From: Eukaryota sp. TZLM1-RC
Taxonomy: Eukaryota > Protista > Metamonada: BaSk clade
Assembly (NCBI GenBank): GCA_040285825.1
Contig: JAUPSS010000003.1
Span: 1,922,001 to 1,986,000, forward strand
DNA length: 64,000 nt
Direction: 5' to 3'
The notes beneath the pieces were generated by a model that did not search any database, was not told where the DNA came from, and saw only the letters and a program-made list of their open reading frames with translations. The translations under genes and the position numbers were made by a program. Shown here in pieces: positions 2,983 through 59,056 of the stretch. Position 1 is the stretch's first letter. Each line of letters begins with the position of its first letter.

Positions 2983-5900
2983 CATTGAGCCAAGTTTCAG
3001 TGGCTTCAAGCCTGATTCATTGATTCAATTCAAATCAATGACCCCAAATCAAAATCTTCCCACTGTAATGTGCTTTGATCTTGAAACCAGTCAGGATGGT
3101 TTTCTTTACATTAATGATGGCCAATTTCTGCCTCTTGATGAGATTATCAACAAAGAGAGAAAAGAGGATGCAAATCTTTTGAGAAAGAAAACTGATGAGC
3201 AAATGGGTGGATTTTAGATCAAAAAGTGTTTTTAATTTCGATTGTTATTGCTAAAATTGACTGCCATAATTTCTGTTTGGACAGTAAATATTCACTTATA
3301 TTGAGAATGAGGTCTCAAGTCAGCAGATTACCAGACATTGCTATGGATATTTAGGCAGAAATTTTCTGTGACGAAAAGCCTGGCGTAAGTTCTTGAACCT
3401 TATTGGTAATTCTCAATTCCATTGTTTTCTTAATCAAAATTTAATGCAGTGTGATTTACAGGTTTTAAAAAATAGAATAAATTATCTTGATTTATTATTT
3501 CCAGATAAAACAGTAATTGATGTACTCAATCAACTTTCACCAAGATGACGAGGAGTTGTCATAAGGAAAAGTGGCTTATTTCTGTTAAATGCTTTTGTAT
3601 TTGTTAAAGCATATTAAAATACCCTACGGACATAGATAAAGCAATCTGGCATATAAAATGATAAATGAAATTAAACTGAAACTTCATCAGAAATTTTCCC
3701 ATATTTTGCCAATTGAATGTTTAGCTACTTCTCCTCTGATACAAAATTCGATTCAATATGGGTTTGATCATTGTATCCTTTGTCAGAAACTTCGTACTTT
3801 ATCAGAAAGACAAATTTATTTTATCATCTTATAAAAACATTCAAGCAGCCGTCAACTCAAATGTGTTACTTAAACTGAGATATACCACTGTAAAAATTCC
3901 ACACTTACGTATTCAAACCACATGTTGTCTGAAGCTGAATTTACAATCTTGTTTTGAACGTAATTTAATACCACCACGAATATCTGTCCAATTATATGAA
4001 GCATTAATTGCCAGAATACGTTATATTTCAGTTGAGTATTATGGGCAAACAATGGTGAAACCATAAAGTGCATTTCCACACGATTTTGAAAACTTTGTTT
4101 ATGGTGAAGGAGATTATAGATTATCGACCACCTTTGAACAACAAAAGTTGAACAAAACATTGAGTTATGTAGACCATTTGAAATATTGGTCTGAGCTTTT
4201 TCCACGCTTTCCAATTGATGGATTCGGTAGACCTCCCGAGTACATGGCCCCAGTAATGTTTGCCAACTTTGAGAATAATTTGAAACTAAATAATGAAAAA
4301 CACATTAATCGATTTATTAATGTTTTTTTGATAAACCAGATGTGGAAACTGTGTTAACTGGATTGCACAAGCTGGATGAATACTCAACGTCACTATGTCC
4401 AATTATTTCACTATATAGATTTGGGCTTCGTCAATTCAAAAACTTGTTATTAGTTGATAGAAATTGCTTGAGGTCTTTGTTTCATCATTTTGAAAATATT
4501 TCAGACCTTCTGAATGATGATTTTTTCGATTTATGTGAACAGTATGATATAAGAAATAACGAACTTAGAGACATATTTGAAGGTCTTATTGAGCCATTTA
4601 CTTGTCAAAGTGAGGATTTGGTCACTGACGAGAATTAAGTTGACAACATATTTCCAGTGGGTATACATTTTCTTGCAGAGGCTGTTGAAACAGATCCTCA
4701 AATATTCCTAAAGCAAGCAATTACAATCGCCGAATATATCTCCAGTACAGAGAAAAACTTATCATATTTCTCCTGTTTCAACCACTGTAGGCCCTGGATT
4801 GTTTCCCATTGATACAAGAACAATATAGACAATTGTTAGACAAACATTGATGGACGATTTGTTGCCTGATCAGAGATTAAAAATGGTCAATACACTGGCC
4901 CAAATTACGAGAATCAAACCACCTGAGCAATTTGACCTTTGGTTTCTTGATTTAAACCAACCAATGTTCAAACAGAAGAGCTACAAATTCAACAGAATTA
5001 TCCACACAGATGGATTTAAAATTGCAGTAGAATTTGTTCGTCAGGATTTACAAGGTCAGAAATGTAAGCCAGACAACAAGGCCAGTATTTCGGATATATA
5101 TTGATGACGTTGATGTTGATACTTTTCAAGACAAACGAATTGTTGATTGTGATCCTGGAAAAGGTGATTTATTGTATTTTGGGAGTAAAAAGACTGATCA
5201 AGAATTAGCCATGGTGCCTTACCATGAAACTGAACAACAAAGAAATAGTCGGGTGAAGAATCAAGACGAGAAATTCAAATGGTTGAGAGTGACTCAGATG
5301 TCCTGGTCTTTGAAAAGTAGGATTAATGAAAAACAGAAACGATGCGCGACAAAGTATAGTGAGGTAGATTACGACAGGAACCAAATGATAGAGTGTAACG
5401 AAATGACAATCGAAGATGCAAACACTGAATTATTCGCGCTTGCTGCATATTCGGCAACTATTATGGAGTTCTCAAACTTTGTGGTTGCCAAACTTCGGCA
5501 AGTTTTTTTGACAATTGACTTTTACAGTCTTCACCTGTGGAGCATTCATATAATGCAAGCTTTTATCCACAGGCAAAAGGCTGAAAGTTGGTTGTTAAAA
5601 TACCTTGTTCAGCAGTTTGGCAACCCAAAAGACACTTAAATACTAATGGGTGATTATGGTAAAAAAGGGTCCAAGAATTTGTAACATCATAGACACTTAC
5701 TCGAGGCATTGGATGGATTCGATTTCAGAAAAGAAAGGTATTTGAAGTGTTGATGATTAATGATGCTTTTACTTCAGCAAAATGTCCTGTTTGTTTTGAA
5801 CAGGTTGCTACGCTTTTGTGAGTAACAAATTCCAGATTCTATAGAAGAGAAAAGACTCCAGTTACTACATGTCATGGTTTATTAGCTTGTAATAGTGAGA

Positions 5901-6104
5901 GTTGCAAACTCAGTAACAACGGCTCAACAAAGGTTTTCAATAGAAATAAGATAGTCTGTCTGAACATGCTTGCAATTGCTGAAGCCAGAATGAGTGGTAA
6001 TGATAGACCCCAATTTCTGTGTAGTAGATAGTTTTTGTAATTATTCCGCACGAAAATAGGTCGTGTACATATGGGAATTTTCTCATATACAATTGTTTAA
6101 ATAG

Positions 6105-6258
6105 ACCCAACAACACAACCCAGCAAAGGGGTAAGGCCGGTAGCATTGAAGGTGGAGACAAATACGATGACAGAAAGCCCTCCAAAGAGGACGTATCAGC
6201 TGTCAAACTGATAAGAACAGATATGCACTTGATTTAAGCCATATAGGCGATGACTAAG
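6105..6258 (-). ncRNA. RNU2: U2 spliceosomal snRNA (divergent branch-point recognition region)
   Basis: Minus strand reads GCCTATATGGCTTAAATCAAGTGCATATCTGTTCTTATCAGTTTGACAGCTGATACGTCCTCTTTGGAGGGC..., collinear with canonical U2; stems I, IIa, IIb and IIc all form; ATTTGT Sm-like site; ends approximate. Confidence 0.9.
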
Positions 6259-6898
6259 GAAAGAAGGATTCTTTCCTAATTTGAATGGCTTCACTAGTGA
6301 AGCTATCTAATATAGGATTGAATTCAACTTGTTGCTATCAATTACAAGTGTTCGAAATTCCTCCATGATCGATCTCCAATGCTCTGTGGCAAAATTTCAA
6401 TACTATTACATAACAACATAAGAAATTTTCAGTTCCCAAAATTCCGATTTCCATTTACCAGATTGACCTTTTTGAACGCGCCAAGAACCACTGAGCTTTT
6501 TAAAAAAGAATAACACTTATTTGTTCACCCTCATGATCGAAATGGCAAGTGCTCTTTTTGAACACCGCAGAAACATTTTATAATTTGGAGTGATATTATA
6601 ATCTTTGAGGACAATAAGCATTTTGAGCCTTATTTCTTTGAGGATTGAAACAATGTAATGCGATTTCCTTAATTTGATAAACTGAATTTGTATGGAAAAT
6701 AAGCTTCGTTGTAATAGGAACCTCGATTGTTCATATAATCGTTATTGGACAGTTTTGGTGCCACAAAATGCTTGATAATCCTATAAACGATTATGGTAGA
6801 ATCGATGTGAGCCTATATATAATCTTACCATTTTCAACATTGGAGAACGCTCACTGAGATGAATCAAGTACCTTTGGATAACAGAAAATGCCATTTTA

Positions 6899-9177: not shown

Positions 9178-10162
9178 AAGAAATTCTGTATTTATTCAAT
9201 TTGCACACTTAATTAAATTAACTCATAACTAATGGGACGACTATCATTGAACCAAGATTTCCTCTACAAAATCTTGATCTGCTTGCTGTCTAGCTAAAGC
9301 TTCTCTAATTCGATTGAAAAACCGTGGTAATCTATTAATAATGGCAAATTGAATCCGTGAACGCCATAAAAAAATATCAAATCTTTTCATTGTTTTTTCT
9401 TGCACCATTTTTTGGAAGTCATTCAAAAAAGTTTCTGCTTCAACTGATAATCTTCCATTTATCGAAAATGGGAAAGCAATAAAAACCAGCTGTGTATTTC
9501 TATCGACATTAGCCTCTTCAATATCTTTATCATATTTTCTATGTTTCGCTTTTGCTTTGAAATCCAGAGCAGCCACAGGATTAAGTTTTCTTCTGTGAAC
9601 CAAAGTATCATTTGCAACATTACATGAGACAAAGTCAACAATAGCTTCAGAATTATCAATCCAATCACAGTATACATCACCTCTATCATCAGAACCAAAA
9701 TTATTTAGAGAAAGTGTTTCCTTCAGCAGGGGCTCTTTGATACACGATATCCTTGCAGTTTGTGCCATATTGAAAACAGTGTCTCTAACAGCATCATGTA
9801 ATGAAGAACGATAAGTTATCAATTTAGAGCAATTCAGAGCATGGCGCAAAGTGAGTTGAGGTGAATTCGAACAATTACATTTTTCTTTTGATAATAATTG
9901 ATTAATGGGGATGTTCAAATACAATCACATTTTTGCTACAAATGCTTCATTAGTGGCACACAATCCAAATCTTCGTGGTACAATGGTTACAAAAAGTGAA
10001 GAATCTGACGACTTGTTTTCACAAACATCCTTTTCCAATGACAATGAGTGAAGATCTTGATTTAAAACAGCCGAGCTGCATATATTATTATAAAGATCTT
10101 TTTCATACATTCCAGTCAATCGTTTCTGCAATGTTCGAACAGTGTACTTCAAATTTAAAACA
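9178..10162 (-). mobile_element. 5'-truncated CRE-like non-LTR retrotransposon (family A), CCHC + RLE region
   Basis: CNC..HALNC, RGDVYCD, KHRKY motifs; 12-bp TSD TGACAAACTTAA at 9166-9177 and 10163-10174. Confidence 0.92.
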
Positions 10163-10189: not shown

Positions 10190-10299
10190 TGTTTGGAAGT
10201 AAATGAATCTTTCTGAAATGAAACTTTCTGAAAAAGAAGTTGAAACTGCAATTTCGTCTTCCATCTGGAAAAGCTCCAGGCCCGTCTGGTATAACTTTT
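10190..10299 (+). mobile_element. Small RT domain-0 fragment of a non-LTR retrotransposon
   Basis: Encodes PSGKAPGPSGITF, matching PSGKAPGPSMITF in the element at 1168-1710. Confidence 0.7.
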
Positions 10300-10442
10300 C
10301 AATAGAAATAAGATGGTCTGTCTGAACATGCTTGCAATTGTTGAAGCCAGAATGAGTGGTAATGATAGACCCCAATTTCTGTGTAGTAGATAGTTTTTGT
10401 AATTATTCCGCACGAAAATAGGTCGTGTACTTATGGGAATTT
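10296..10442 (+). mobile_element. Fanzor family 1 3'-end fragment (RuvC-III tail + conserved non-coding end)
   Basis: Near-identical to 5934-6080, including about 50 nt past the stop codon. Confidence 0.88.
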
Positions 10443-11560: not shown

Positions 11561-11770
11561 TGAATAATTTCACATTAATGCTCTAATGGAACGTTCCCTG
11601 CTTTTCTATGAAGCCTTTTTTCTAATTTGAATAGCAAAATTTCAATTTATTGACTGATTTTCTATCATTTCTGTTAATAGTCAAGTTTTGTTTATTTGGA
11701 TGCATTAATAATTAATTTAATAATTAAGTTCACGGTAATTACTTGCTGTGTATTTTAATTTTGGTGTTTA

Positions 11771-18163: not shown

Positions 18164-18735
18164 TTACTCCTTTTTGCGTCCTTCAGTTTGCTTGTTTCTG
18201 AGAGTCTTGTAGCAAGATTCGGTCTGAGTAGGGAGGGAACCAAGAGTAACAAATTCACGATCAGCTTGAAGTGGCATGACGGTACCGACATGCTGTTGAG
18301 CTTCATGGATGTTGCTGGCCTTCTTCATTGGGAAGACGGTGAGTTTGGAAACGTATTCCTTGAGTCTTTGGGCATTTTGTTGGAGAGACTCTTGACAACG
18401 GTTCACTCTTCTGTGATCGACAGCAATACCGATGGTACGGGCATACTTGGCACTGAGACCAGCTTCCTATGGTGAACTAAACGATCTCAACATACAGCAA
18501 GTTCTTGCATGGTGAAACCGCGACCAAGACGTTGACGAACATTGTACCTTTGAGTGGCACAGTGGACAATGGGACGAAGAGACTCGGTAGGACGAGGGAA
18601 CATACGGGCAGCCTTGGCAGCACGAGCCTGACGACGAGCCTTTTTCTTGGCTGGTTGGTTGAACCACATCTTGGCCAACTCCTTATGCTTCTTCAAGTAG
18701 TGAACATTAGATACAACGTTGTTTCCTGCCGTCAT
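18164..18735 (-). CDS. RPL13: 60S ribosomal protein L13 (eL13), two exons
   Basis: [37 protein letters not shown] motifs; removing intron 18467-18495 restores ELA-EAGL frame. Confidence 0.97.
18467..18495 (-). other. 29-nt spliceosomal intron in RPL13
   Basis: GTATGT...TTCACCATAG; its removal is required to join the two RPL13 ORFs. Confidence 0.92.
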
Positions 18736-23182: not shown

Positions 23183-26014
23183 TAAATGCAATGAATTTGT
23201 TTTCGTTTTTCAAAGATTTTTGGATCAATTATGTAAAGGAAAGTATGCTATCAATATTATTTGGGAATTTTTGGTTCTTTTTGTCCTCCTTTTGAACAAA
23301 ATTTCGTAAATATTTCCGAAGATTTAACTAATATAGCACCGAGAAATCAGTCATCCGACAAATTAAGTAAAATTTTTGAAAACTAATGTTTTAACAACAA
23401 ATGGTCCAAGGCTTTGTCAGCTTTAAGTCCCGGAGTTAAAGCACCCAACAATGAAAACACAATAGATGAACTAAAAGTACTTCATCCTTATGAAGACCCT
23501 ATAATGGATCAAAATATTTACGGCACATACTGGGAAAATTATCCATTGATGCCATCAGAAGTTTTTTCGGTTATCAAAAAGAGACCACGTGGTAAGTCTG
23601 CTGGACTTTCTGGTACTACTATTGATCATGTAAATGCCGCGATTATTTCTTCAGAAGATTGCCTTTGTTTATTGACCAAATTTTTCACCCAATCATTATC
23701 TGCTCAACTCAAATACCCAGAAGAATTAAGAAGTTCTCGTTTGACTGCACTTGTCAAAAATTCAAAAATGGATTTCGTCCTATTGCAGTCTCTGAGAGCT
23801 TACAGAATATTTATTCTGCGTGTTGCTTAAGCAGGTTAAATGAGAAAGCAAAAAAAATTTTATTACCATTTCAATATGGTATAAATACTGCAGATGGAGT
23901 CTCTTCAGCGATATTTGCTACTACTGTTTTATTTCGCCAAAATGAATCCAATGTTTGCATGTCATTGGATTTTAGTAATGCTTTCAATTCACTGAGTCGT
24001 CGCAGTATCCATGGTGCTCTATTGCAATATATGCCGGAATTAATACCGTATTTTCAATCAACATATTGCACATATTCGAATTTACATTTTGGTAACAACA
24101 TTTTGAGTTCATCAAGTGGCGTAAAGCAAGGAGATCCGTTAGGACCTCTTTTGTTTTGTTTAGCCATCCATCCTATTTTACTGCAAATTCAAAAGATGTT
24201 TCCTTCACTGAAAATGATTGCATATATGGATGATGTTGTGCTTATTGATGATTTATATATTGTGAAACAAGCAACTGTATGTTTTAAAGAAATTGGTCTC
24301 CGACTTAATTTACTTAAATGTGTTTTGTTATCGAATTCTCCAGTTTCCACAATAGTTGATGGTATTGAATTTCAAGCCAAATTATATTCAATTGATGCTA
24401 TTCGTCATTTGGGTTCGTTTTAGGAAATAATGATGAAATTACCAAAAAATTGTTTGAAAAGTTGAACTCAATTTCTGACAAGATTTAGATTTTGTGGAGA
24501 AAATCTTGGTTCAATGATAGTCGTCCCATTAGTATTGAGTTAATTTAATTAAGTGTGCAAATTCAATAAATATAATTTCTGACAAAATTGACAGAATGAT
24601 GAATTTAGATATACAACAACACATCAAATTTACCATTATAAGACTGTGTTTTAGTTCCAATTTTAATCATATATTTCGATCTACAAATCCTCTCGGCACT
24701 AGACCTTTGGCTCAAAAGTTGAATGAGTTACGTGCAAAAGCTCTGTCTCAATTACTGGGATGTAAAATGTTTCAAATTCCAGATCATGCTTACCTTAGTC
24801 CACATTATGGTGGATTAGGGTGGACGAAGGCTTCTATTCTTACCTCGTGTGCTTTTGTTGGTGGATGCAGAAATGCAATCTTTGAGTTTTCCGAAAGATT
24901 TGCAGATTGGGAAGATTTATTGATGACAACGCAAAGTTCCACTGTTTTTGCATTAACTGAACAAATTTCAAGAATTGATGTAGAAAAATGGGGTCGATGT
25001 TTTCCCCAATCATTCAATGGCAATATTCCAGAAAAAAATGTTTTAAATTTGAAGTACACTCTTCGAAAATTACAGAAACGATTGACTGGAATGTATGAAA
25101 AAGATCTTTATAATAATATATGCAGCTCGGCTGTTTTAAATCAAGATCTTCACTCATTGTTATTGGAAAAGGGTGTTTGTGAAAACAAGTCGTCAGATTC
25201 TTCACTTTTTGTAACCATTGTACCACGAAGATTTGGATTGTGTGCCACTAATGAAGCATTTGTAACAAAAATGAGATTATATTTGAACATCCCCATTAAC
25301 CAATTATTATCAAAAGAAAAATGTATTTGTTCGAATTCACCTCAACTCACTTTGCACCATGCTCTGAATTGCTCTAAATTGATAACTTATCGTTCTTCAT
25401 TACATGATGCTGTTAGAGACACTGTTTTCAATATGGCACAAACTGCAAGGATATCATGTATCAAAGAGAGCCCCTGCTGAAGGAAACACTTTCTCTGAAT
25501 AATTTTGGTTCTGATAATAGAGGTGATGTATACTGTGATTGGATTGATAATTCTGAAGCTATTGTTGACCTTGTCTCATGTAATGTTGCAAATGATACTT
25601 TGGTTCACAGAAGAAAACTTAATCCTGTGGCTGCTCTGGATTTTAAAGCAAAAAAGAAACATAGAAAATATGATAAAGAAATTGAAGAGGCAAATGTCGA
25701 TAGAAATACACAGCTGGTTTTTATTGCTTTCCCATTTTCGATAAATGGAAGATTATCAGTTGAAGCAGAAACTTTTTTGGATGACTTCCAAAAAATGGTG
25801 CAAGAAAAACCAATAAAATATTTGATATTTTTTATGGCGTTCACGGATTCAATTTGCCATTATTAATAGATTACCGCGGTTTTTCAATCGAATTAGAGAA
25901 GCTTTAGCTAGACAGCAAGCAGATCAAGATTTTGTAGAGGAAATCTTGGTTCAATGATAGTCGTCCTATTAGTTATGAGTTAATTTAATTAAGTATGCAA
26001 ATTCAATAAATAAA
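23183..26014 (+). mobile_element. 5'-truncated family A CRE-like retrotransposon inserted in Fanzor copy 2
   Basis: RT (AYMDDV), CCHC and RLE motifs; collinear with 48621-51958; 10-bp TSD TAAATTCAAT at 23173-23182 and 26015-26024. Confidence 0.92.
24482..24573 (+). mobile_element. 92-bp family A 3'-end copy nested within a family A element
   Basis: 12-bp TSD AATTTCTGACAA at 24470-24481 and 24574-24585. Confidence 0.92.
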
Positions 26015-26701: not shown

Positions 26702-28471
26702 TATAAAAACCATATTTATGGATTTATTAATGTTTATGTTGACAAATTAGATGTGGAAAATGTGTTAGCAGAAATGCACAAGCTGGGTGAATACTCAACG
26801 ACATTATCTCCAATTACTTCATTATATATATTTAGGCTTCGTCAATTCAAAAATTTGTTCTTGGTTGATGATGGAGTTTGCTTGACTTCTTTGTTTCTTC
26901 ATCCTGAAAATATTGCAGACTTTCTGAATGATGAATTTTTCGATTTATGTGAACAACATGATATTAGTAATAATGAACTTACAGACATCTTTGAAAGTCT
27001 TATGAGGCATTTACTTGTCAAATTGAGAATTTGATCACTGACGAGAATTTAGTTGATAACATATTTCCAGTGTTTATACACTTTCTTGCAGACGCTATTG
27101 AAAAAGATCATCAAATATTCCTAAAACCAAAAACTACAATTGTCCAATTTATTTGCAGTAGTGAGAGAAAACCTTATCATATTTCTCCTGTTTCAACCAC
27201 TGTAGGCCCTGGATATTTTCCTCTTGATACAAGAACAATATAGACAATTGTTGGACAAACTTTGATGGACGATTTGTTGCCTGATGAGAGATTAAAAATG
27301 GTCAATGCACAAGCCCAAATTCTTAGATTCAATCCACCTGGGCAATTCGAACTTTGGTCTAATATTCTCGATTTAAACCAACCATTGTTCAAACAAAAGA
27401 GCTATAAATTCAACAACATAATCCATACAGTTGGATTTTATATTTCAGTAGAATTTGTTCGTCAGGATTTACAAGGTCAGAAATGTAAGCCAGACAACAA
27501 GGCCAGTATTTCGGATATATATTGATGATGTTGATGTTGATACTTTTCAAGACAAACGAATTGTTGATTGTGATCCTGGAAAACGTGATTTATTGTATTT
27601 TGGAAGTAAAAAGACTGATCAAGAATTAGCCGTGGTGCCTCAACATGAAACTGAACAACAAAGAAATAGTCAGGTGAAGAATCAAGACGAGAAATTCAAA
27701 TGGTTGAGAGTGACTCAGATGTCCTGGTTTTTGAAAAGTAGGATTAATGAAGAACAAAAACGATGGGCGACAAAGTATACTGAGGTAGATTACGACAGGA
27801 ACCAAATGATAGAGTCTAATGAAATGACAATTGAAGATGCAAACACCGAATTATTCGCGTTTGCTGAAACTTCAGCAACTTGTACAAATTCTAACTTTGT
27901 GGTTGCGAAACTTCGGCAAGTTTTTTTGACAATTGATTTTTACAGTCTTGACTTGTGGAGCATTCATTAAATGCAAGCTTTTGCTCACAAGCAAAAGATT
28001 GAAAGTTGGTTGTTAAAAAATCTTGTTCAGCATTGTGGCAACCCAAAAGATACTTTAATACTAATGGGTGATTATGGTAAAAAAGGTTCCAAGAATTTGA
28101 AACATCATAGACCTCCACTCGAGGCATTGGATGTATTCAATTTCTGAAAAGAAATGGATTTGAAATATTGATGATTAATGAAGCTTTCGTTTCAGCAAAA
28201 TGTCCTGTGTGTTTGGAAAAGGTTGCTACGTTTTTGAGAATAGCAAATTCCAGATTCTACAGAAGAGAAAAGACTCCTGTTACTACATGTCATTGTTTAT
28301 TAGCTTGTAATAGTGAGAGCAAACTCACTAACAAAGACTCAACAAAGCTTTTCAATAGAAATAAGCTGGCTTGTCTGAATATGCTTGCAATTGCTGAAGC
28401 TAGAATGAGCGGTAATGAGAGGCCTCAGTATCTGCGTAGTAGATGGTTTTTGTTATTATTCTGCATGAAAT
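26702..28471 (+). pseudogene. Fanzor family 1, copy 2, 3' part (WED/RuvC/Zn finger)
   Basis: IVDCDPGKRDLLY, INEAFVSAKCPVC, CHCLLAC, FNRNKLACLNM, RPQYLRS; collinear with 4292-6056. Confidence 0.88.
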
Positions 28472-28572: not shown

Positions 28573-29550
28573 ATGACTATTAATTCTCGTCTGGATGAAC
28601 TCCTTGACACCACAAACACCGACCTCGAAGAAGGATCTCCCAACATTGCTTCAGAGAGCGAAGAAGATGAAACAGTTTGACTTTATTGTCCTCTCTCATC
28701 CAAGCAACCGGAACACATGAATGAATTCTATGTAGAAGTGTCTCGTGTAAAATCTTTACTAAACAACATGGCAGAATCCTTAGATGAACTAGGTGCCAAC
28801 TTTGGAACCACAGAAACCTACTATGGATCTATTGACAGTAAGAAGGAGGAGCAAATGCTCGAACAGCAGCGAGAGCAAGTCAACTCTCTCATTGAAGAAA
28901 TTGGAAACATCATAGGCACATGCAAGACCATTTTGAAATCCATGGAAGAGCGCACTGATCAGCTAGTTGAGGAAGAAAACTTGACCTGTCACAACCAAAT
29001 TAGAAGAACTATCCATGGCACTCTTAGCAAGCAATTCTACGACCAAATGCGCAGGTTCCAGGAGATGCAGACTGAACATAGAGACAATCTCAAGCAAGAG
29101 CTTATCCGTCAAGTGTCATGGCAGGAGAACATTGACCTAGATGGTTCTGATTTAGCCCAGTCCCTACTCGATGGTAATGTTTCTGCGAACCTGTCTCTTG
29201 TACAGAGTTCTCTTATTGCTGGGAGTTCCATGGTAGCGAATGACAGACTGCAGAACACATTGGAACGCCACCAGGATGTAGTGAAGATTACGGAAAGCAT
29301 CTCACAACTTGCTGGTCTTATGCAAGACTTTGCTCTCTTAGTCCAGGCCCAAGGTGAAAAGCTTGAGCGATTGGACTCTTACACGGCGGCGTCCGTACGG
29401 TATGTCATTGGAGGTAATCAACAGTTGCAAAAGGCGATAAGATCAAAGAGAAGGTTTAGGAAGAAGGCGTGCTGTTTGCTTTGCTGCTTGACTGTGTTGT
29501 TGTTATTCTTTTTGTTTCCACTGTTGAGTTCTGCTGCTGGTAATGCTTGA
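28573..29550 (+). CDS. Qa-SNARE syntaxin (plasma-membrane Syntaxin1/SYP1-like), two exons
   Basis: Habc helices, ERHQDV...ALLVQAQGEKLERLD SNARE motif, polybasic + Cys + C-terminal TM; intron 28675-28704 joins MTINSRLDEL in frame. Confidence 0.92.
28675..28704 (+). other. 30-nt spliceosomal intron in syntaxin
   Basis: GTTTGA...CTCATCCAAG; contains an in-frame TGA, and removal gives a continuous ORF. Confidence 0.8.
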
Positions 29551-37096: not shown

Positions 37097-39014
37097 AATT
37101 TCTGTTAGTTCTTTTGAAAATCATTTCAAAATCTGCCAAAAAACGTATAGCCGTGGGAGCAAGTGAACCAAATAGAGAAAACACCAATGGATACAAATTG
37201 TATTTTACATGCTGTTGATTGGACAATTTAATTAAAGGTTCATTGTATTTTTTGATATTCAAATTTTCAGCATTTGATAGAAGATGATGAATTTCAGAAT
37301 TAACAAGTGTTGGGTTCCACTGCAGTGACCAAAGGAAAAGCTGCATTAATTAACAAAAACAGAATTTAAACTATTGCCACGTCATCACACGTGATTTGAT
37401 GTTATCCAACATCTAACAATACCCCTTCTTCACCTCTCCTCTTTGATGATGGCAAATTCTTTGTTAAAGGATTGAGGACAACTTCAAACGGTTCTTCATT
37501 CGGGGAATCATTATCATGAACAGTCAGCACGTCACCAAGGCGTGATTTAGAACAAGTATTGGTAACTACTTCATTAACAACACAAAGAACAGTGTTCACT
37601 TTTTCTAGTTCTATAACACTGTGAACGTTGGTGGATCTTGTAGCGTCGTGATTCTGGACATTATTATTGTGGGGAGGGCAATTAAGAGCAATATGACCTG
37701 GCATATGACATCTATAGCAATTTTTGGTAGCAATATCTGTATCTCTAAAAGCTGAACGGAAATTTCAAGTATACAGAATTTCTGATTAAACTTTAGATCT
37801 ATCATGGGCAACAATTCCTTTAGTACCGACCTGCACAAGAGTTTTGAAATCAGGAATCAATTGGTCATTAATACGAAAGAGAGGGGATTCAGCAAGTCCT
37901 TTGGGAGTAATACCAGCGGCAAATTGTTTCATAAACACAGAATTAAAAATGACAAGACAGTCAGCCTTTTCCTTTTCCTTCAGAAAGCTTCTGAGGTCAT
38001 CGTTCATTCTTTCTTTGGCACTTGTAATTTTTACGTTCATTTTCAACCGAGACAGGGTTGGAGGTTGTAGTAGGAGGAAAAATTGTTTAGGACTGCAGAT
38101 AGTTGAACAACACACTATCAGAATATTTAATTTTAGGTTCATACAACTCTAACGACTTTGAAATAGAAGAATCTACAGAGAGTCTTAACAAAACCATTTT
38201 AGTGTTATCAGTGACAGACTGATACACTTCAAATTCGCTCAAAAACATTCATACATCTCCCTCGGACAGCGAGGTTAGATAGGGACGGTCGACAGGACGC
38301 ATCTAACGGTTTTACCAAAGGCAGGAACAAGAACATTGACGGTACAGGGACTGGGACAGGGTCAAGAACAAAAAAGTTATTATTGGGTTTTACTGCAGTA
38401 ACCAAAAGAAAAGATTTTATAATTGACAAAAACCGAATTTCAACTATTGCCACGTCATCACCAGTGATTTCATGTTATCCAAAATCTAACACAAGCCTTT
38501 TATTTGAGACATTAGAAGGATCATCAGACATTACATCCAATAAAATGGAGGTTCCATCTAATCTGGGTAATATGACATCACCTATATATTCTTAGAAAAT
38601 CATCATCAGCATCAAACAGGTTTGACAACAAAGTTCCAAAAAGGATTAAATTTTATGAGACCTACACATAAAATTAAATTGGTCTTTGACAGCAACATTG
38701 CTTCTAAGAATAATATGATGTTTACAATTTAACAAATGAGTAAGTATAATTTTTTGAGTACAATTACAAATTGAATTATGAGGCAAATTATGGTGCCAGA
38801 TAAAAGAACGAAGTCTCTTTCTTTTTTCTTTCTGATGCTGAAAATTTCAAAATCAAAAAATACAATGAACCTTTGTCCAAATTGTCCAGTCAACAGCATG
38901 CAAAATACAATTTGTATCCATTTGTATTTTCTTTTTTTGGTTCACTTGCTCCAACGGCTATACGTTTTTTGGCAGATTTTGAAATGATTGTAAAGAGAAG
39001 AACTAACAGAAATT
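37097..39014. repeat. Cassette bounded by about 180-bp inverted repeats of a retrotransposon RLE tail, copy 1
   Basis: Arms at 37097-37273 (minus) and 38835-39014 (plus); paralogous to 61804-63569. Confidence 0.85.
37308..38491 (-). mobile_element. Non-autonomous LTR element family 2 with gag remnant
   Basis: 111-bp LTRs at 37308-37418 and 38381-38491; TSD CTTG; purine tract; zinc knuckle CYRCHMPGHIALNC. Confidence 0.88.
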
Positions 39015-41788: not shown

Positions 41789-43747
41789 TCAACACGTGAT
41801 ATTTCTGAGTGATACGGAATCCATAGCTTTAGGGATAAGAACACACCAGGGGAAAGACGTTAGCAATAGTAATTGGGACCTTTTCAAAATGTAACAAGCT
41901 TCTAGCAATTGATATTTGTTCAAGTATTTTTGCAATCTACAACCATGACTGAAAGAACAAAGACAATATATACATAAAAGTGGAAACTGTTCAGCTCTAA
42001 TAGATGAGAAAATGTTGAATGAAGTTGCAAATTGCTTCAGAGAAGGAAAGACGACGTTCCTACCAATTACGACTTTTGGCTTCAGTTTTAAAGATAATGA
42101 TGTGACTAATGAGGGTAGTAACGTCACTCCTTCAAGAATCGAAGCAGAAACTTCATAATCAAAAACACCTAAAGAACGCAAATTTGTCAATTCAGACAGT
42201 GTTCTTGGAAGTTCAATGCGCACATCAAGTCCCAGTGATAGTTCCACCAGAGTAAAAGGGAGATCACTAACAATACTAGTTGGAAAATCCAAATTCAGGA
42301 ACTTCAATGCTTTGAGATGCTTCAAGTTGAGAACTTTTGTACAATGTAATGGCGCATTAGTCAAGCATAAATTTGGTCTAATGGTTATTGATTGAACATT
42401 GAGAAAGCTGGCAAGCATTCCTTGATGATTATCCAGGTCGTTGGATACAAGTAAAACTTCCTTAACGACTGAATTCTCAGATGGGATGGTGTAGGATGTG
42501 TATGGTTGTATATTTACTCTGGTCAATGTTTCACAATCAAGTATTGAGTAGCAGTTTTGTACAAAACGTTGTGATCCAAACAAGGAAACAACATGACGAG
42601 CCAATGAACGAAACCTCTTGCTTATAGAGAACTTCTGTAAAAAGTGGCACTCAATATAGTGGTGAATTCCTAACAAAGATCTTAACCATTCAAGATGACG
42701 GAGCATTATAGCCTTGATGACATCATTGAACATATGTTGAAGGCCAACTATGGATGTTGTGCCTCGTCCAGTTACCTCTGATCCAAACACTATAACGGGA
42801 ACAGGTTGATGGTCAGAACAACCAAGTCCAAGTTGTCCACACGAGTTCCAGCCACAGCCTAGGATACATTGCTCTGTTACAACAAAGAGAGATTTTGCCA
42901 AAGCAAATACTGCTGAACAGCCATTCTTTAAATAGGTAACTGGTGATATATTAACTTCCTCAGGTAATCCCAGTGTACCTGCTTGATTCCAGCCCCACAG
43001 AAGAACCTGGCCATCATGAGTGAGTGCGACAGAGAAGAATGACCCAGCAGCTACAGCTTTGATCAAAGACAACATTGGCACTTTTTGTGGAGTTTCCATG
43101 TACTCTGTATGCCCAAGACCTAACTGACCATAATTGTTGACACCCCAGCTCCATAAATGACCACCATTATCAACTGCTAGAAAGAAACCTTGTCCTACCG
43201 CAACTGATACAGCACTGAGGTTAGTGATAGATGCAACTGAATCTTGACAATAGGTATACACTGCTTGTTCTTCAGTGATCATAATCACATTATCATCATA
43301 GTTTTCGAGCTGCACAACACCAACGGGGCCTATAGTGTGAAAGTCTTGTTCGTTTCCCCATTTCAGCACTCTTTTGTCTGCAGTTATGGCAAATGAACAA
43401 TATAGTCCTGCAAAAACTCGGCTCACTAAACAAGGCAGTTCGATTGGCGTAGGGCACAATAAGGGATTATCGTGACTCATTGAAAGTTGACCATGATCAT
43501 TCCTTCCCCAACCCAAAACTTCTTTATTAGACGTTATTGCTAGACAGTGGGTTGCACCAGAGGCAATATCGACAATGTTTTCGATGGGAAGTTTCACTGG
43601 TATAACAATCGCTTGGGGCAAACCTGGGATGATTTGGCAGAACCTGTTATCACCACAGCAGTAAACATGGCCTTCCTTGTTTAAAATGAGACTACGATGT
43701 GTTCCAGAAACCCGAATAGTTGCGAGCTCTTGATGAGGATCAGTCAT
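41789..43747 (-). CDS. RCC1-repeat protein with C-terminal LRR-like region
   Basis: GWGRNDHGQL, SWGVNNYGQLGLG, GWNSCGQLGLG repeats; LPFTLVELSL/L..L..L..L repeats. Confidence 0.9.
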   Translation of the reverse strand: MTDPHQELATIRVSGTHRSLILNKEGHVYCCGDNRFCQIIPGLPQAIVIPVKLPIENIVDIASGATHCLAITSNKEVLGWGRNDHGQLSMSHDNPLLCPTPIELPCLVSRVFAGLYCSFAITADKRVLKWGNEQDFHTIGPVGVVQLENYDDNVIMITEEQAVYTYCQDSVASITNLSAVSVAVGQGFFLAVDNGGHLWSWGVNNYGQLGLGHTEYMETPQKVPMLSLIKAVAAGSFFSVALTHDGQVLLWGWNQAGTLGLPEEVNISPVTYLKNGCSAVFALAKSLFVVTEQCILGCGWNSCGQLGLGCSDHQPVPVIVFGSEVTGRGTTSIVGLQHMFNDVIKAIMLRHLEWLRSLLGIHHYIECHFLQKFSISKRFRSLARHVVSLFGSQRFVQNCYSILDCETLTRVNIQPYTSYTIPSENSVVKEVLLVSNDLDNHQGMLASFLNVQSITIRPNLCLTNAPLHCTKVLNLKHLKALKFLNLDFPTSIVSDLPFTLVELSLGLDVRIELPRTLSELTNLRSLGVFDYEVSASILEGVTLLPSLVTSLSLKLKPKVVIGRNVVFPSLKQFATSFNIFSSIRAEQFPLLCIYCLCSFSHGCRLQKYLNKYQLLEACYILKRSQLLLLTSFPWCVLIPKAMDSVSLRNITC

Positions 43748-54127: not shown

Positions 54128-56091
54128 ATGAGTCTACTACAACCTGGTACCAAGTACACTGCACCACCTGAAGGGAGGCATACTCTGTTTCACTCCTTCC
54201 AAACTACGGCTAACCTACAACCTGATGAAAGTTGTCTTGGTACAAGAAGAATGAAAAAAACTGATGCAAATTATAAATACGGTGCATATGAATGGCTTAC
54301 CTACGGAGAAGCTCTTTCTAGAGTAGAAACCATCGCTACAGCATTGCATGACCTTGGGATACAGAAAGGCGACAGGGTAGGGATCATGAGCAAAACAAGA
54401 AGAGAATGGGAACTTGCAAGTCTTGCATGTCTGCGTCAGGGATATGTTTTAACTCCACTGTATGATAATGTTGGTATCAACGAAACAGAACATGTAATTA
54501 ACGATGCAGAAATTTCTGTTTTATTTATAGAACCTTCACGAATTGACCTCCTAAACAGCTTAGATCTTTCTCATTTAACAAGGATCATTCTGTTTAACAG
54601 TAATGTACGTGATATTGACAGTATCAGGTCCACTTCCTTACCTGCCAATTGCTGTACTCTTTCGGATATAATGGCCTCCCAATCTGATCCTCCTCCCATC
54701 AAATGCAATGGAGACGATCTTGCATCCATAGTGTACACCTCAGGAACTACTGGCAGAGCAAAGGGTACGATGCTGACCAATAACAACATTATGTATTCGA
54801 TAATAGGACTAAATGAAAGAATGCCTGACAGAATCGACCAGCAAGATGTTTTGATAAGCTTTCTGCCGTTAGCCCACATCTTTGCCTTTGTGGTGGATCA
54901 CCTCTTTTTCGCCCATGGACATGCTATTGGGTATTATATGGGAGATATGAAGGGGATATTGGAGGACGTGCAGGCATTGAAGCCTACGCTATTCGTGGGG
55001 GTACCAAGAGTCTTTTCCAAGTTGACGGAACGTGTGCTTGCTAAGGGGAGACAGTCACATCTGAAAAGCCTGATGTTCACACATGCATTGAGTGTAAGGA
55101 AGCGTTACTTGAGTGGGGAGGGAGGAGCAGTGTTGAACAAATTATATGATCGGTTTGTTCTTATTATATTTCTAATTTCAGGTTGGTATTCAGTAAAATC
55201 AGACGAATGTTTGGTAATCGAATTCGAACATTCTATTCTGGTTCAGCCAAACTTGATCCAAAAGTAGCTTCTCTTATATGTTGCTTCTTTTCAGCTCCCA
55301 TTGCGGAGGGCTATGGCACAACAGAAACCAGTGCTGGAGGTTTCATTGACCATCTTCCAAGGTTTGGGCATGATAATCTCGATACTTATTTCGGAACCGT
55401 AGGTCAGAGCGTTGATGGTATTGAGTATCGGCTATTGGAAGCACCTGAATACGGGTATAGTTATCCCCAAGGTGAACTATGTATCAAAGGGCCTTCTGTA
55501 TTCCAAGGTTATTGGAAGATGGACGACAAAACAAGAGAATCTTTCACTGAGGATGGCTTCTACAAAACGGGAGACATTGCTGAGGTCAATGAGCAAGGCA
55601 AGCTAGTCATTATAGACCGAGTGGGGGCTGTTGTGAAATCGGATAGAGGCGAGTTTATCAATTTGGGTGTCTTGGAAGAACACTTTGAGAGTTGCTCAAA
55701 AGTGGACCATGTATTAGTTGTTGGTGGAAAGACTCCAAAGTTGTTGGCTGTCGTCACACCCTCTGCTGAAAAGATTGAAGAGCTACAACAGTATCAACAA
55801 CAAGGTGAGGAGGCCAAAGTTGAAGAATTTGCACGGGAAATATTGGAAGAATTTAGGGTTATTGCAGAGAGGAAGAGACATCGTAGTTTTGAATATGTTT
55901 GTGACTTAGAGTTAAGCTTAGAGCAATGGACTCCAGATAATGGAATGTTAAGTTCTACGTTTAAAAAGAAGAGGAATGTTATTGTAGGTCGCTACAAGGA
56001 TGATATTGATGCAATGATTTCAAAGGTTAATTCAAAGGAATATGGAACAGATTGTCTTACTCATCTTTCTTGTTTTCAAGTAGCAATGTAG
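54128..56091 (+). CDS. Long-chain acyl-CoA synthetase (ACSL/LACS family), two exons
   Basis: YTSGTTGRAKG, FLPLAHIF, EGYGTTE, YKTGDI, IIDR; intron 55153-55181 joins the two ORFs. Confidence 0.96.
55153..55181 (+). other. 29-nt spliceosomal intron in acyl-CoA synthetase
   Basis: GTTTGT...CTAATTTCAG; removal gives YDRLVFSKIR. Confidence 0.92.
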
Positions 56092-56962: not shown

Positions 56963-59056
56963 TTATTTAAAAACCAGGTCAATAAAAGACCCATAGTTTG
57001 GGCACTGTACCCACCAAGGAAACCAGGATAATTCAACTAAATATTCATTCTCAATGAGTTGAACAGATTTAATTAAACCACTTCCTTTCAGATGTTCCAT
57101 TGGAAAATCAGACTCAATAGATTTTTCACATACTCTGCTTAGGGAAACAAATTTTAAAGAAGGAAAATTATGGTTGGTGATATTGGTAGGAATTTTTCCA
57201 TGGACAATTAACTCCTTCAAGTTGAATAGTTGGATTTCTATATGCAAAACATCGTGAAATCGCATTTCTAAAGTAACAATTGACTGAGGGAGCGGAATTT
57301 GACCATTTGATATTCTTTTCGAAATATAGTCATCACTCAATACCACTAATTCTTTTAATGACGTAAGATAGCTTAAATCAGTAACCTCAATGTCATTGTT
57401 GGTGAGCACTAACTTCACTAGTGAAGTAGGTAATTGTTCTATTTTGAATGGATAATTAAGTTCTAGAGATTTCAGATTTGATAAATGTGTTAGGATTAAT
57501 TTTTGGTAAGAACCTGAAGACCCAACAAGTTTAACAACCTCGACATTCGGGAAAAAAGACAATAATTTTAAATCAAATTCTAAAAACATGTTATAGCAAA
57601 CATCAAGTTTTTTAATTTTGGTATTGATTACTTTGGGACCTGTGTAATCAGTTGATAATCGCAATTGTAAACCACAAATATTTTGATTCAAATTTAAATC
57701 TTGAGGGTCTTTTAAAGTCAAATCAGTTTGAACAGAAAGACCATTAATCACTTCTTGAGCAAATTGAGCCACCCTTTTACTAATACCACACTTGGAGTAA
57801 AATCTTGCTTTAACATATGGATGATTACCAAAGAGCTTTTGCAAACAATTTAAATATTCCCAATAAACAAGCTTGATTAGACCACTAAACATGCTATCCA
57901 AAGGTTTTTTTAGATGACGAAAACTGCCAAGTAGTTCAGACCCAAATACTTTGACAGGTTGTGGTCGATCAATCAAATCACCTGTTCCTAATTGACCTTT
58001 ATCGTTCCTTCCCCAAGCCCAAACAGTGTTTTTGTTGTAGGCAAAAAGAAAGTCATCACCTACAGAAATACCTTCTATATTGGTTAGTGCTTCAATACAA
58101 ATTGGTTCCTTAATATCTTCATAAGCATTACTGATTCTACTCAACTCACCCCAAACAAAAACTTTACCAATGTCATTTAGAGCGGCATAAATACAATCGC
58201 GACCATTAATATAAACAATATTACTCAACCCTGAAACTTTGGTGGGTTTGTTATTGAAACTATATCCCAGATCAAACTTCCAGACATAGCCAATATTACA
58301 AAAAACAAAGAGTTCAAAAGAATCAAATAAAAAACATGATTTCAGAGGAATTCCTGGAGTAATACTACTAGACTCAGGAACCTTGGTAATGCATGTACTG
58401 AAGGTGTCCCTGTAAAAGAAATTATTGTGAGTGTCCATTGCGACAAAGGAATCATAATATAAAGATATAAACTCTATATTATTCAAACCTTTTATTAATT
58501 CAAACGACTTACCCTTTCCCCATTTAACAACTTGACCTTCCTGGGTCAAAGCAGAAGAGAAAACATCACCATAAACTTCCTTAATATTATAAGGAATGTT
58601 AATCAGGGTAATGGGCAGTAAAGTATCGAATGACTTAATGATTTGATTGTCTTCATTGCTACCCCAACCATACAGCTGACCTTGAGAAGAGAAGGCAAGG
58701 GAGTGGTCATTACCAGCTGAAATGGAAGTAATACTGGTGATTGGCAATTTGATTGGCAATATGATTGTTGTGGGTCCATTATATATAACTTGACCATGAG
58801 CATTACACCCCCATCCATAAACCTCACCAGAAGAGGTGAGGAGCAGCGTGTGTGCAAACCCAACGGAGACACATCTAACTCCAAACTGTGGACCTGATGA
58901 GGCGATGTGATGGGAGTTTGCAATAGAACTTAGTGAATGGTTGGTAGAGTGGCAGACTGTGGTATTTAATGGATGACCATCGTGAGCATTGTCACTAGGA
59001 GATAGAGAAACTGGGCACAGATCAGAAGAACTTGAACCCAAGAAATGTGAAGACAT
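56963..59056 (-). CDS. RCC1-repeat protein with C-terminal LRR-like region (paralog of 41789-43747)
   Basis: GWGCNAHGQ, AWGRNDKGQLGTG, LPTSLVKL, FPSLK, FPWW. Confidence 0.9.
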   Translation of the reverse strand: MSSHFLGSSSSDLCPVSLSPSDNAHDGHPLNTTVCHSTNHSLSSIANSHHIASSGPQFGVRCVSVGFAHTLLLTSSGEVYGWGCNAHGQVIYNGPTTIILPIKLPITSITSISAGNDHSLAFSSQGQLYGWGSNEDNQIIKSFDTLLPITLINIPYNIKEVYGDVFSSALTQEGQVVKWGKGKSFELIKGLNNIEFISLYYDSFVAMDTHNNFFYRDTFSTCITKVPESSSITPGIPLKSCFLFDSFELFVFCNIGYVWKFDLGYSFNNKPTKVSGLSNIVYINGRDCIYAALNDIGKVFVWGELSRISNAYEDIKEPICIEALTNIEGISVGDDFLFAYNKNTVWAWGRNDKGQLGTGDLIDRPQPVKVFGSELLGSFRHLKKPLDSMFSGLIKLVYWEYLNCLQKLFGNHPYVKARFYSKCGISKRVAQFAQEVINGLSVQTDLTLKDPQDLNLNQNICGLQLRLSTDYTGPKVINTKIKKLDVCYNMFLEFDLKLLSFFPNVEVVKLVGSSGSYQKLILTHLSNLKSLELNYPFKIEQLPTSLVKLVLTNNDIEVTDLSYLTSLKELVVLSDDYISKRISNGQIPLPQSIVTLEMRFHDVLHIEIQLFNLKELIVHGKIPTNITNHNFPSLKFVSLSRVCEKSIESDFPMEHLKGSGLIKSVQLIENEYLVELSWFPWWVQCPNYGSFIDLVFK

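What the first reader, a model, noticed from the sequence alone, without database searches (positions are those of the whole stretch)
6105..6258. U2 snRNA whose 'invariant' branch-point pairing sequence GUAGUA is changed to GCAUA
Seen: the minus strand reads AAGTGCATATCTGTTCTT where canonical U2 reads AAGTGTAGTATCTGTTCTT (one substitution and one deletion at 6222-6228). The rest looks selected rather than decayed: stem I GCC/GGC, stem IIa TATCAG/CTGATA and stem IIb GTCCTC/GAGGGC form, and a rewritten IIa loop TGACAG has an exact downstream complement CTGTCA (compensated stem IIc). Established: GUAGUA pairs with the UACUAAC-type branch site and is nearly universal. Inference: this spliceosome may select the branch A with minimal U2 pairing. 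Only G:Y and A:U pairs flanking the bulge would remain, matching the T-n-A-Y seen in this window's introns.
Basis: partly seen in the sequence, partly recalled or inferred. Interest (0 to 1): 0.88.

Follow-up and report, generated by a model that had tools for sequence, protein, structure and literature searches.

The report
U2 snRNA with altered branch-site pairing
This is a real U2 spliceosomal RNA gene of the free-living anaerobic flagellate Skoliomonas litria in which the almost universal branch-site pairing sequence GUAGUA reads GCAUA, but I could not show that this copy, rather than another U2 gene elsewhere in the genome, is the one the cell uses.

Summary
Rfam finds one U2 snRNA on the minus strand at 6104-6257 (55.3 bits, threshold 46). 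At 6222-6228 it reads GUGCAUA where canonical U2 reads GUGUAGUA. The flanking core AUCUGUUCUUAUCAG is canonical, and stems I, IIa, IIb, a IIc-like complement and a 3' hairpin all pair.

The contig is JAUPSS010000003.1 of GCA_040285825.1. Its length equals the published N50 of Skoliomonas litria, a metamonad sister to Fornicata.

The three well-supported annotated introns in the window are 29-30 nt and read Y-T-N-A-Y at -10 to -6, with the A fixed at -7. Two introns of Skoliomonas sp. RCL do the same. The altered U2 keeps the G and the A that would face the two constrained positions. It does not gain pairing: the base before the branch A is never G.

I could not test whether this copy is the working U2. 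No sequencing run was listed, and no other U2 copy or relative's U2 could be fetched. Earlier scan notes name further U2-like loci, two of which may carry the canonical sequence.

Odds:
- real, used U2 with relaxed pairing: about 0.5
- variant or silent copy: about 0.33
- variant used alongside a canonical U2: about 0.12
- assembly error: about 0.05

The scan had noted this same stretch before as s1-656339.

The parts
6104..6257 (-). U2 snRNA gene as aligned by Rfam. The mature 5' end is probably at 6251 (AUCGCC...).
   Evidence: RF00004 at 55.3 bits against a gathering score of 46, model positions 1-192. It is the only family that fits.
6222..6228 (-). Altered branch-site recognition sequence: GUGCAUA instead of GUGUAGUA.
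   Evidence: Read directly. The Rfam alignment shows U to C plus a one-base gap.
6231..6235 (-). U2/U6 helix Ia segment reading AAAUC instead of AGAUC, so the helix Ia core GAUC is AAUC.
   Evidence: The partner in U6 could not be examined because there is no U6 in the window.
6238..6248 (-). Shortened stem-loop I: GCC-UAUAU-GGC.
6194..6213 (-). Stem-loop IIa: UAUCAG, loop UUUGACAG, CUGAUA.
6177..6192 (-). Stem-loop IIb: GUCCUC, loop UUUG, GAGGGC.
6168..6173 (-). CUGUCA, the exact complement of UGACAG in the IIa loop. This is a IIc-like pairing in a register shifted from the usual one.
   Evidence: A 6-nt complement of the loop occurs in 1.2% of shuffles.
6158..6163 (-). Atypical Sm-like site, AUUUGU.
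   Evidence: Aligned to the Sm region of the Rfam model at low posterior probability.
6104..6150 (-). Single 3' stem-loop, aligned to stem-loop IV of the model. Stem-loop III is absent.
55153..55181 (+). 29-nt intron of the acyl-CoA synthetase gene. It ends CTAAT-TTC-AG.
   Evidence: The annotated gene is 29 nt longer than its 644-aa product needs. One GT..AG removal restores the frame. Sequence read.
18467..18495 (-). 29-nt intron of the RPL13e gene. It ends TTCAC-CAT-AG.
   Evidence: A second GT..AG solution 4 nt downstream also restores the frame, but it lacks the GTATGT donor.
28675..28704 (+). 30-nt intron of the syntaxin gene. It ends CTCAT-CCA-AG.
5604..6081 (+). It ends 23 nt beyond the U2 3' end, convergent with U2.
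   Evidence: Repeat copies at 28022-28470 (88% identity) and 10296-10442 (98%). The alignment loses identity after about 6081.

Best explanation
This is a genuine U2 snRNA gene of Skoliomonas litria. Its branch-site recognition sequence has drifted from GUAGUA to GCAUA because this lineage places the branch adenosine mainly with a ruler, not by extended base pairing.

Shown:
- The gene and its sequence.
- Introns here are 29-30 nt, with the A fixed at -7 from the 3' end inside Y-T-N-A-Y.

Inferred:
- In the U2/intron helix, the G of GCAUA still faces the Y after the branch A, and the A still faces the T two bases before it.
- The new C faces the unconstrained N.
- The G that would have paired with the Y at -3 is gone.
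- So U2 would contribute about two pairs around the bulged A. Proteins of the U2 particle and the nearby 3' splice site would do the rest.
For: - Rfam calls it U2 and nothing else.
- All five helices pair, and the universal flank AUCUGUUCUUAUCAG is intact. Random decay heavy enough to hit the 6-nt core twice should also have broken a stem (inference).
- GC is 45% against about 35% in the surroundings, as expected for a maintained RNA gene.
- Three annotated introns in the window and two in Skoliomonas sp. RCL all read Y-T-N-A-Y at -10 to -6.
- Eight independent earlier notes from other parts of this genome describe the same -7 ruler (unchecked leads).
- Other notes describe re-tuned U1 snRNAs (unchecked leads).
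- There is a precedent for a working U2 without GUAGUA in trypanosomatids (PMC4950102).
Against: - There is no expression data and no raw reads. No sequencing run was listed.
- No other U2 copy of this genome and no relative's U2 could be fetched.
- Earlier notes list other U2-like loci. One is a 'GC-rich island carrying the U2 branch-site-recognition sequence' and another an 'expanded U2'. Either could be a canonical working U2.
- The change lowers pairing with the intron consensus rather than restoring it.
- The three departures from universal positions, in helix Ia and the branch core, all sit at the most critical sites. That pattern also fits a disabled copy.
- Diplomonad U2 RNAs, the nearest studied relatives, keep branch-site pairing (PMC6679479).
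- The gene lies in repeat-rich DNA.
Confidence: 0.5

Rival explanations
1. This is a variant or silent copy. S. litria has several U2 genes, the working ones keep GUAGUA, and this copy acquired disabling changes in the branch core and helix Ia. It is then little used or not used at all.
For: - Earlier notes list at least four other U2-like loci, two described in ways that suggest a canonical branch-site sequence.
- All three changes hit essential positions.
- The change reduces complementarity to the Y-T-N-A-Y consensus.
- A broad survey found GUAGUA strictly retained, apart from a few substitutions in two sponges (PMC13685798).
- The neighbourhood is full of mobile elements.
Against: - All stems are intact, and about 40 flanking universal positions are unchanged.
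- A young copy with only about three mutations would rarely place all of them within 12 nt. By my estimate that chance is about (12/154)^3. An old copy should show broken pairs.
- None of the other loci was seen by me.
Confidence: 0.33
2. There are two working U2 classes. A canonical U2 and this GCAUA variant are both expressed and serve different intron subsets, for example ultra-short ruler introns against longer or trans-spliced ones.
For: - The copy looks maintained, which suggests selection.
- Earlier notes hint at structurally different U2-like RNAs of 144-154 nt and of 361-377 nt.
- Giardia snRNAs show mixed U2/U12 character and some trans-splicing (PMC6679479).
Against: - I saw no second intron class. 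All five introns examined share one motif.
- There is no match to U12 or to any other snRNA family at this locus.
- This reading is entirely indirect.
Confidence: 0.12
3. It is an assembly or polishing artefact. The true sequence is GUAGUA, and the nanopore-based consensus is wrong at this spot.
For: The assembly is nanopore-based with Illumina polishing, and U2 is multicopy, which complicates polishing (PMC11316075).
Against: - A substitution plus a one-base deletion in a context with no homopolymer is not a typical residual error at 41x nanopore and 206x Illumina coverage.
- Mis-mapped reads from paralogues would pull the consensus towards the majority form, not away from it (inference).
- The flanks are unique sequence.
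Confidence: 0.05

Closest known systems
Canonical U2 snRNA (Rfam RF00004)
   Same: - 5' sequence AUCGC...
- GCU of helix Ib
- AUCAAGUG and AUCUGUUCUUAUCAG
- stem-loops I, IIa and IIb
- a 3' hairpin
- score above the Rfam gathering threshold
   Different: - GUAGUA is GCAUA.
- Helix Ia GAUC is AAUC.
- Stem I is cut to 3 bp.
- There is no stem-loop III.
- The Sm site is AUUUGU.
- The RNA is about 148 nt rather than about 190.
Diplomonad U2 snRNAs (Giardia, Rfam RF02492; Spironucleus, PMC6679479)
   Same: - Metamonad relatives.
- Reduced 3' domain with a single long hairpin.
- Introns with the branch point fused to the 3' splice site at a fixed distance.
   Different: - They keep a branch-site pairing sequence that bulges the A. 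The Giardia model consensus reads GUGUAGUUACUG.
- They keep the GCU and GAUC of helix I.
- Their introns carry a strong CTAAC or CTRAC motif, whereas Skoliomonas has only Y-T-N-A-Y.
Trypanosomatid U2 snRNA
   Same: It is a working U2 whose GUAGUA is replaced (UUAUAA in Leishmania major) and whose Sm site is atypical (PMC4950102). That shows the spliceosome can do without the canonical pairing core.
   Different: - The lineage is unrelated (Discoba).
- Its splicing is mostly trans-splicing.
- The regions flanking the core are also divergent, whereas here they are canonical.
Variant U2 gene copies and pseudogenes of multicopy snRNA families
   Same: It is one of several U2-like loci in a repeat-rich genome, with changes at essential positions.
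   Different: It has no scattered substitutions and no broken stems. Membership cannot be judged without the other copies.

Membership tests
U2 spliceosomal RNA (RF00004) | Covariance-model score at or above the curated gathering score | tested here: met
   55.3 bits against 46, full model span 1-192.
U2 spliceosomal RNA (RF00004) | Branch-site recognition sequence GUAGUA | tested here: not met
   It reads GCAUA at 6226-6222. The family still applies on the model score, so this is a departure within the family.
U2 spliceosomal RNA (RF00004) | Stem-loops I, IIa and IIb, and the conserved single-stranded core around them | tested here: met
   All three helices pair. AUCAAGUG and AUCUGUUCUUAUCAG are identical to the consensus.
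U2 spliceosomal RNA (RF00004) | Helix I partners for U6 (GCU and GAUC) | tested here: inconclusive
   GCU is present. GAUC reads AAUC. U6 is not in the window, so a compensating change could not be looked for.
U2 spliceosomal RNA (RF00004) | Sm site RAU(3-6)GR followed by stem-loops III and IV | tested here: inconclusive
   The site reads AUUUGU. Only one 3' hairpin is present, and model positions for stem-loop III are deleted. Studied metamonad U2 RNAs show a similar reduction.
U2 spliceosomal RNA (RF00004) | Transcribed and assembled into the U2 particle | not testable with these tools
   No sequencing run was listed for this DNA, so no reads could be laid.
U12 minor-spliceosome RNA | Match to the U12 model and a branch-pairing sequence of the U12 type | tested here: not met
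   Only U2 is reported for this stretch, even at E up to 10. Where overlapping matches belong to one clan the tool keeps only the best, so a weaker U12 match would not be listed.
U2 with a replaced branch core (trypanosomatid type) | The organism's only, expressed U2 lacks GUAGUA | not tested
   The other U2 loci of the genome could not be read.

The most novel reading that the evidence does not exclude
Skoliomonas litria, and perhaps the whole skoliomonad group, splices ordinary cis-introns with a U2 snRNA that has lost the GUAGUA core. That would make it the first such case outside trypanosomatids. Branch choice would be set almost entirely by a 7-nt ruler from the 3' splice site plus two flanking pairs (U:A and Y:G). 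A matching C-to-U change in U6 helix Ia is predicted.
Probability: 0.45. Interest if true: 0.75.

Novelty: new variant of a known kind. Interest (0 to 1): 0.55.

Why it matters
Pairing between U2 and the branch site is one of the most conserved RNA-RNA contacts in eukaryotes. A recent survey still found GUAGUA strictly retained, even in ciliates whose branch sequences vary widely (PMC13685798).

A free-living, culturable organism with about 30-nt introns, a rigid branch-to-3'-splice-site ruler and a U2 lacking that core would be a natural experiment. It would show how much of branch selection rests on RNA pairing and how much on proteins and geometry. It would also show how snRNAs and intron signals drift together in intron-reduced lineages.

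If the copy turns out to be silent, the finding is an ordinary snRNA gene variant.

Tried and rejected
1. Reads. The look-up of sequencing runs listed no run, so read laying could not be used. Neither expression nor the assembly was checked.
2. Synteny. The neighbouring 697-aa gene has no homologue in the protein collection other than itself. The PIG-M orthologue locus of Skoliomonas sp. RCL (L002, 21 kb) holds no snRNA. A JGI metagenome contig with a PIG-M homologue (L003) encodes a mitochondrial carrier, so I took it for an unrelated, mitochondrion-bearing eukaryote and did not pursue it.
3. Pattern scans for the variant core (AAGTGNATATCTGTTCTTATCAG) gave 0 hits in metagenome, genome and viral contigs.
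4. A scan for the IIa-loop version found one contig (L004). It is a full-length canonical U2 (131 bits) of an unrelated organism. It was useful only in showing that the loop UUUGACAG is not lineage-specific.
5. I asked whether the repeat ending next to U2 targets U2 genes. Its two other copies in the window have unrelated flanks and no U2, so I rejected the idea. Pfam gave nothing for ORF 5034-5639, so I did not confirm the Fanzor label.
6. I tried to sample more of the genome through a repeated 174-aa product. It has only one exact place, so the look-up was wasted.
7. De novo intron finding by open-frame logic was too noisy, because of frameshifted mobile-element genes. I used annotated gene lengths instead.
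8. Two further annotated 'introns' (26 and 34 nt, in L007 and L008) and the 88 nt of extra annotated length in a 142-aa gene (at least two introns) lack the donor and branch motif and lie in repeat-derived genes. I set them aside as doubtful predictions.
9. Duplex energies of U2 against the introns were weak for both the variant and the canonical core, and were uninformative.
10. A search for a shared promoter word upstream of U2 found nothing elsewhere in the window.
11. The earlier-findings index would not take sequence words, off-window coordinates or sequence look-ups.

Exons were joined only inside scripts, to locate intron borders.

Full report
**What is there**

Reading the minus strand of 5900-6500 shows a sequence that begins like every U2 snRNA (AUCGCC...GGCU...AUCAAGUG) and continues with AUCUGUUCUUAUCAG. 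Between these two blocks it reads CAU where canonical U2 reads UAGU. Rfam's U2 model (RF00004) matches 6104-6257(-) over its whole length at 55.3 bits (gathering score 46, E 3e-8 for the window). It aligns GUGCA-UAUCU to GUGUAGUAUCU.

No other snRNA is in the window. No other family fits the stretch at relaxed thresholds.

**Anatomy**

- Stem I is cut down to GCC/GGC.
- Stem IIa (UAUCAG/CUGAUA) and stem IIb (GUCCUC/GAGGGC) pair perfectly.
- The IIa loop UUUGACAG has an exact 6-nt complement, CUGUCA, downstream of IIb. That happens in 1.2% of shuffles.
- The register of this IIc-like helix differs from the usual one. In the canonical metagenomic U2 found, which has the same loop, the downstream partner complements CAGUUUGA instead.
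- The model's stem-loop III is deleted, a single 3' hairpin remains, and the Sm-like site is AUUUGU.
- One more universal position differs. Helix Ia GAUC, which pairs with U6, reads AAUC.

**Whose genome**

The neighbouring gene's product sits on NCBI contig JAUPSS010000003.1 of GCA_040285825.1, which is 3,724,615 bp long. That length is the N50 reported for the 16-contig, 31.9-Mb, 35.8% GC assembly of Skoliomonas litria (Williams et al. 2024, PMC11316075). The closest PIG-M homologue, at 42% identity, is from 'Eukaryota sp. TZLM3-RCL', the strain that paper calls Skoliomonas sp. RCL.

Skoliomonads are free-living, anaerobic, soda-lake metamonads, and together with barthelonids they are sister to Fornicata. 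The assembly is nanopore-based (41x) and polished with 206x Illumina.

**The introns this U2 would have to recognise**

I fetched the NCBI gene calls for the window and compared each gene's span with its product length. Three genes with ordinary products carry one extra stretch of 29-30 nt. In each case a script found the GT..AG removal that restores an open frame of the annotated length, and I read the sites back.

| Gene | Window position | Length |
|---|---|---|
| acyl-CoA synthetase | 55153-55181(+) | 29 nt |
| RPL13e | 18467-18495(-) | 29 nt |
| syntaxin | 28675-28704(+) | 30 nt |

For RPL13e a second solution 4 nt downstream also restores the frame, but it lacks the GTATGT donor.

Positions -10 to -6 of these introns read CTAAT, TTCAC and CTCAT. 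Two introns of strain RCL (L002) read CTCAT and TTAAT. So all five have Y-T-N-A-Y with the A exactly 7 nt from the intron's end. Eight earlier notes from other contigs describe the same ruler. They are unchecked leads, but they agree with what I tested.

The joining of exons was done only inside scripts.

**How the altered core would meet that motif (inference)**

With canonical GUAGUA, the partners of intron positions +1, -1, -2 and -3 relative to the bulged A are G, U, A and G. With GCAUA they are G, C, A and U.

- The two partners facing the constrained Y(+1) and T(-2) are kept.
- The partner of the free N changes.
- The G that would pair with the conserved Y(-3) is lost.
- The base at -1 is A, C, C (and C, A in RCL), never G. 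The new C therefore does not create a pair.

The change fits relaxed constraint, not compensatory co-evolution. Duplex energies are weak with either core.

**Is this the working U2?**

I could not decide this.

For:
- Every helix is intact, and about 40 universal flanking positions are unchanged.
- Neutral decay would either leave too few mutations for three to cluster within 12 nt, or enough to break a stem.
- The rigid ruler offers a reason why the core could drift.
- Trypanosomatids show that a U2 without GUAGUA can work (UUAUAA in L. major, PMC4950102).

Against:
- The three departures sit at exactly the positions whose loss would disable the RNA.
- Diplomonad U2 RNAs keep branch-site pairing and helix I (PMC6679479).
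- A 2026 survey found GUAGUA retained almost everywhere (PMC13685798).
- Earlier notes record other U2-like loci in this genome: a 144-nt sister copy, a U1-U2 cluster, a 361-nt 'expanded U2', and a 377-nt 'GC-rich island carrying the U2 branch-site-recognition sequence'. I could read none of them.

**Attempts to reach other copies or relatives all failed**

- No sequencing run was listed.
- There is no synteny with the RCL genome.
- Pattern scans found no variant U2 in metagenome, genome or viral contigs.
- The one IIa-loop hit was an unrelated canonical U2.

**Assembly error**

This is unlikely on general grounds. The difference is a substitution plus a deletion away from any homopolymer, the flanks are unique, and short-read polishing is deep. 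It remains unverified.

**Verdict**

- The identification as a U2 with a changed branch-site core is sound.
- The mechanistic reading (ruler-based branch choice with minimal U2 pairing) fits the introns but rests on an untested premise.

If true, it would be the first such U2 outside trypanosomatids, and in an organism with ordinary cis-splicing. That makes it a new variant of a known kind, of real interest to splicing specialists. If a canonical U2 is expressed elsewhere, it is an ordinary variant copy.

The scan had noted this same stretch before as s1-656339.

Noticed in passing
window 5604-6081 (+), with copies at 28022-28470 and 10296-10442: A repeated element, which first-stage notes call a Fanzor, ends about 23 nt beyond the U2 3' end and is convergent with it. 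If its 3' end encodes a guide RNA that reads into the flank, that flank runs antisense into the U2 3' end. The other two copies have unrelated flanks, so there is no sign of U2 targeting. Pfam found nothing in ORF 5034-5639.
   Followed up: partly
window 6258-6323 (-), upstream of U2: Directly upstream of the U2 start lie two perfect palindromes, GGAAAGAA-TCC-TTCTTTCC (about -2 to -20 from 6257) and CTTCACTAGTGAAG (about -32 to -45), plus a TATATTAGATAG box further up. The start context TCA|TCGCC resembles a Trichomonas-type initiator (from my own knowledge). I could not compare it with the '26-bp snRNA promoter' of note s1-656584.
   Followed up: no
L002 (Skoliomonas sp. RCL, JAUPST010000008.1) 9402-9432 (+) and 11659-11690 (-): The RCL strain has 31-32-nt introns in RPL17 and a glutathione-synthetase-like gene, with the same Y-T-N-A-Y-NNN-AG ending. 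The ruler therefore predates the split of the two Skoliomonas lineages, whose PIG-M proteins are 42% identical.
   Followed up: partly
L004 795-988 (+) (metagenome contig PJEL010209407.1): A full-length canonical U2 (131 bits) from an unidentified eukaryote in a metagenome. It shares the IIa loop UUUGACAG with the Skoliomonas U2 but pairs it in the usual IIc register (CAGUUUGA/UCAAACUG).
   Followed up: partly
window about 24596-25866 (+) (L007 17503-18773) and beyond the window end (L008 1218-1920); also window 37786-38302 (-) (L006 18325-18841): Several annotated 'introns' in repeat-derived genes (26, 34 and 88 nt of extra length) lack the GTWTG donor and the -7 branch motif. They look like gene-prediction patches over frameshifts in decayed mobile-element genes.
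   Followed up: partly
window 41789-43747 (-) and 56963-59056 (-): Two paralogous RCC1-repeat proteins of 652 and 697 aa lie 13 kb apart. Reverse-transcriptase genes and an acyl-CoA synthetase gene sit between and around them.
   Followed up: no
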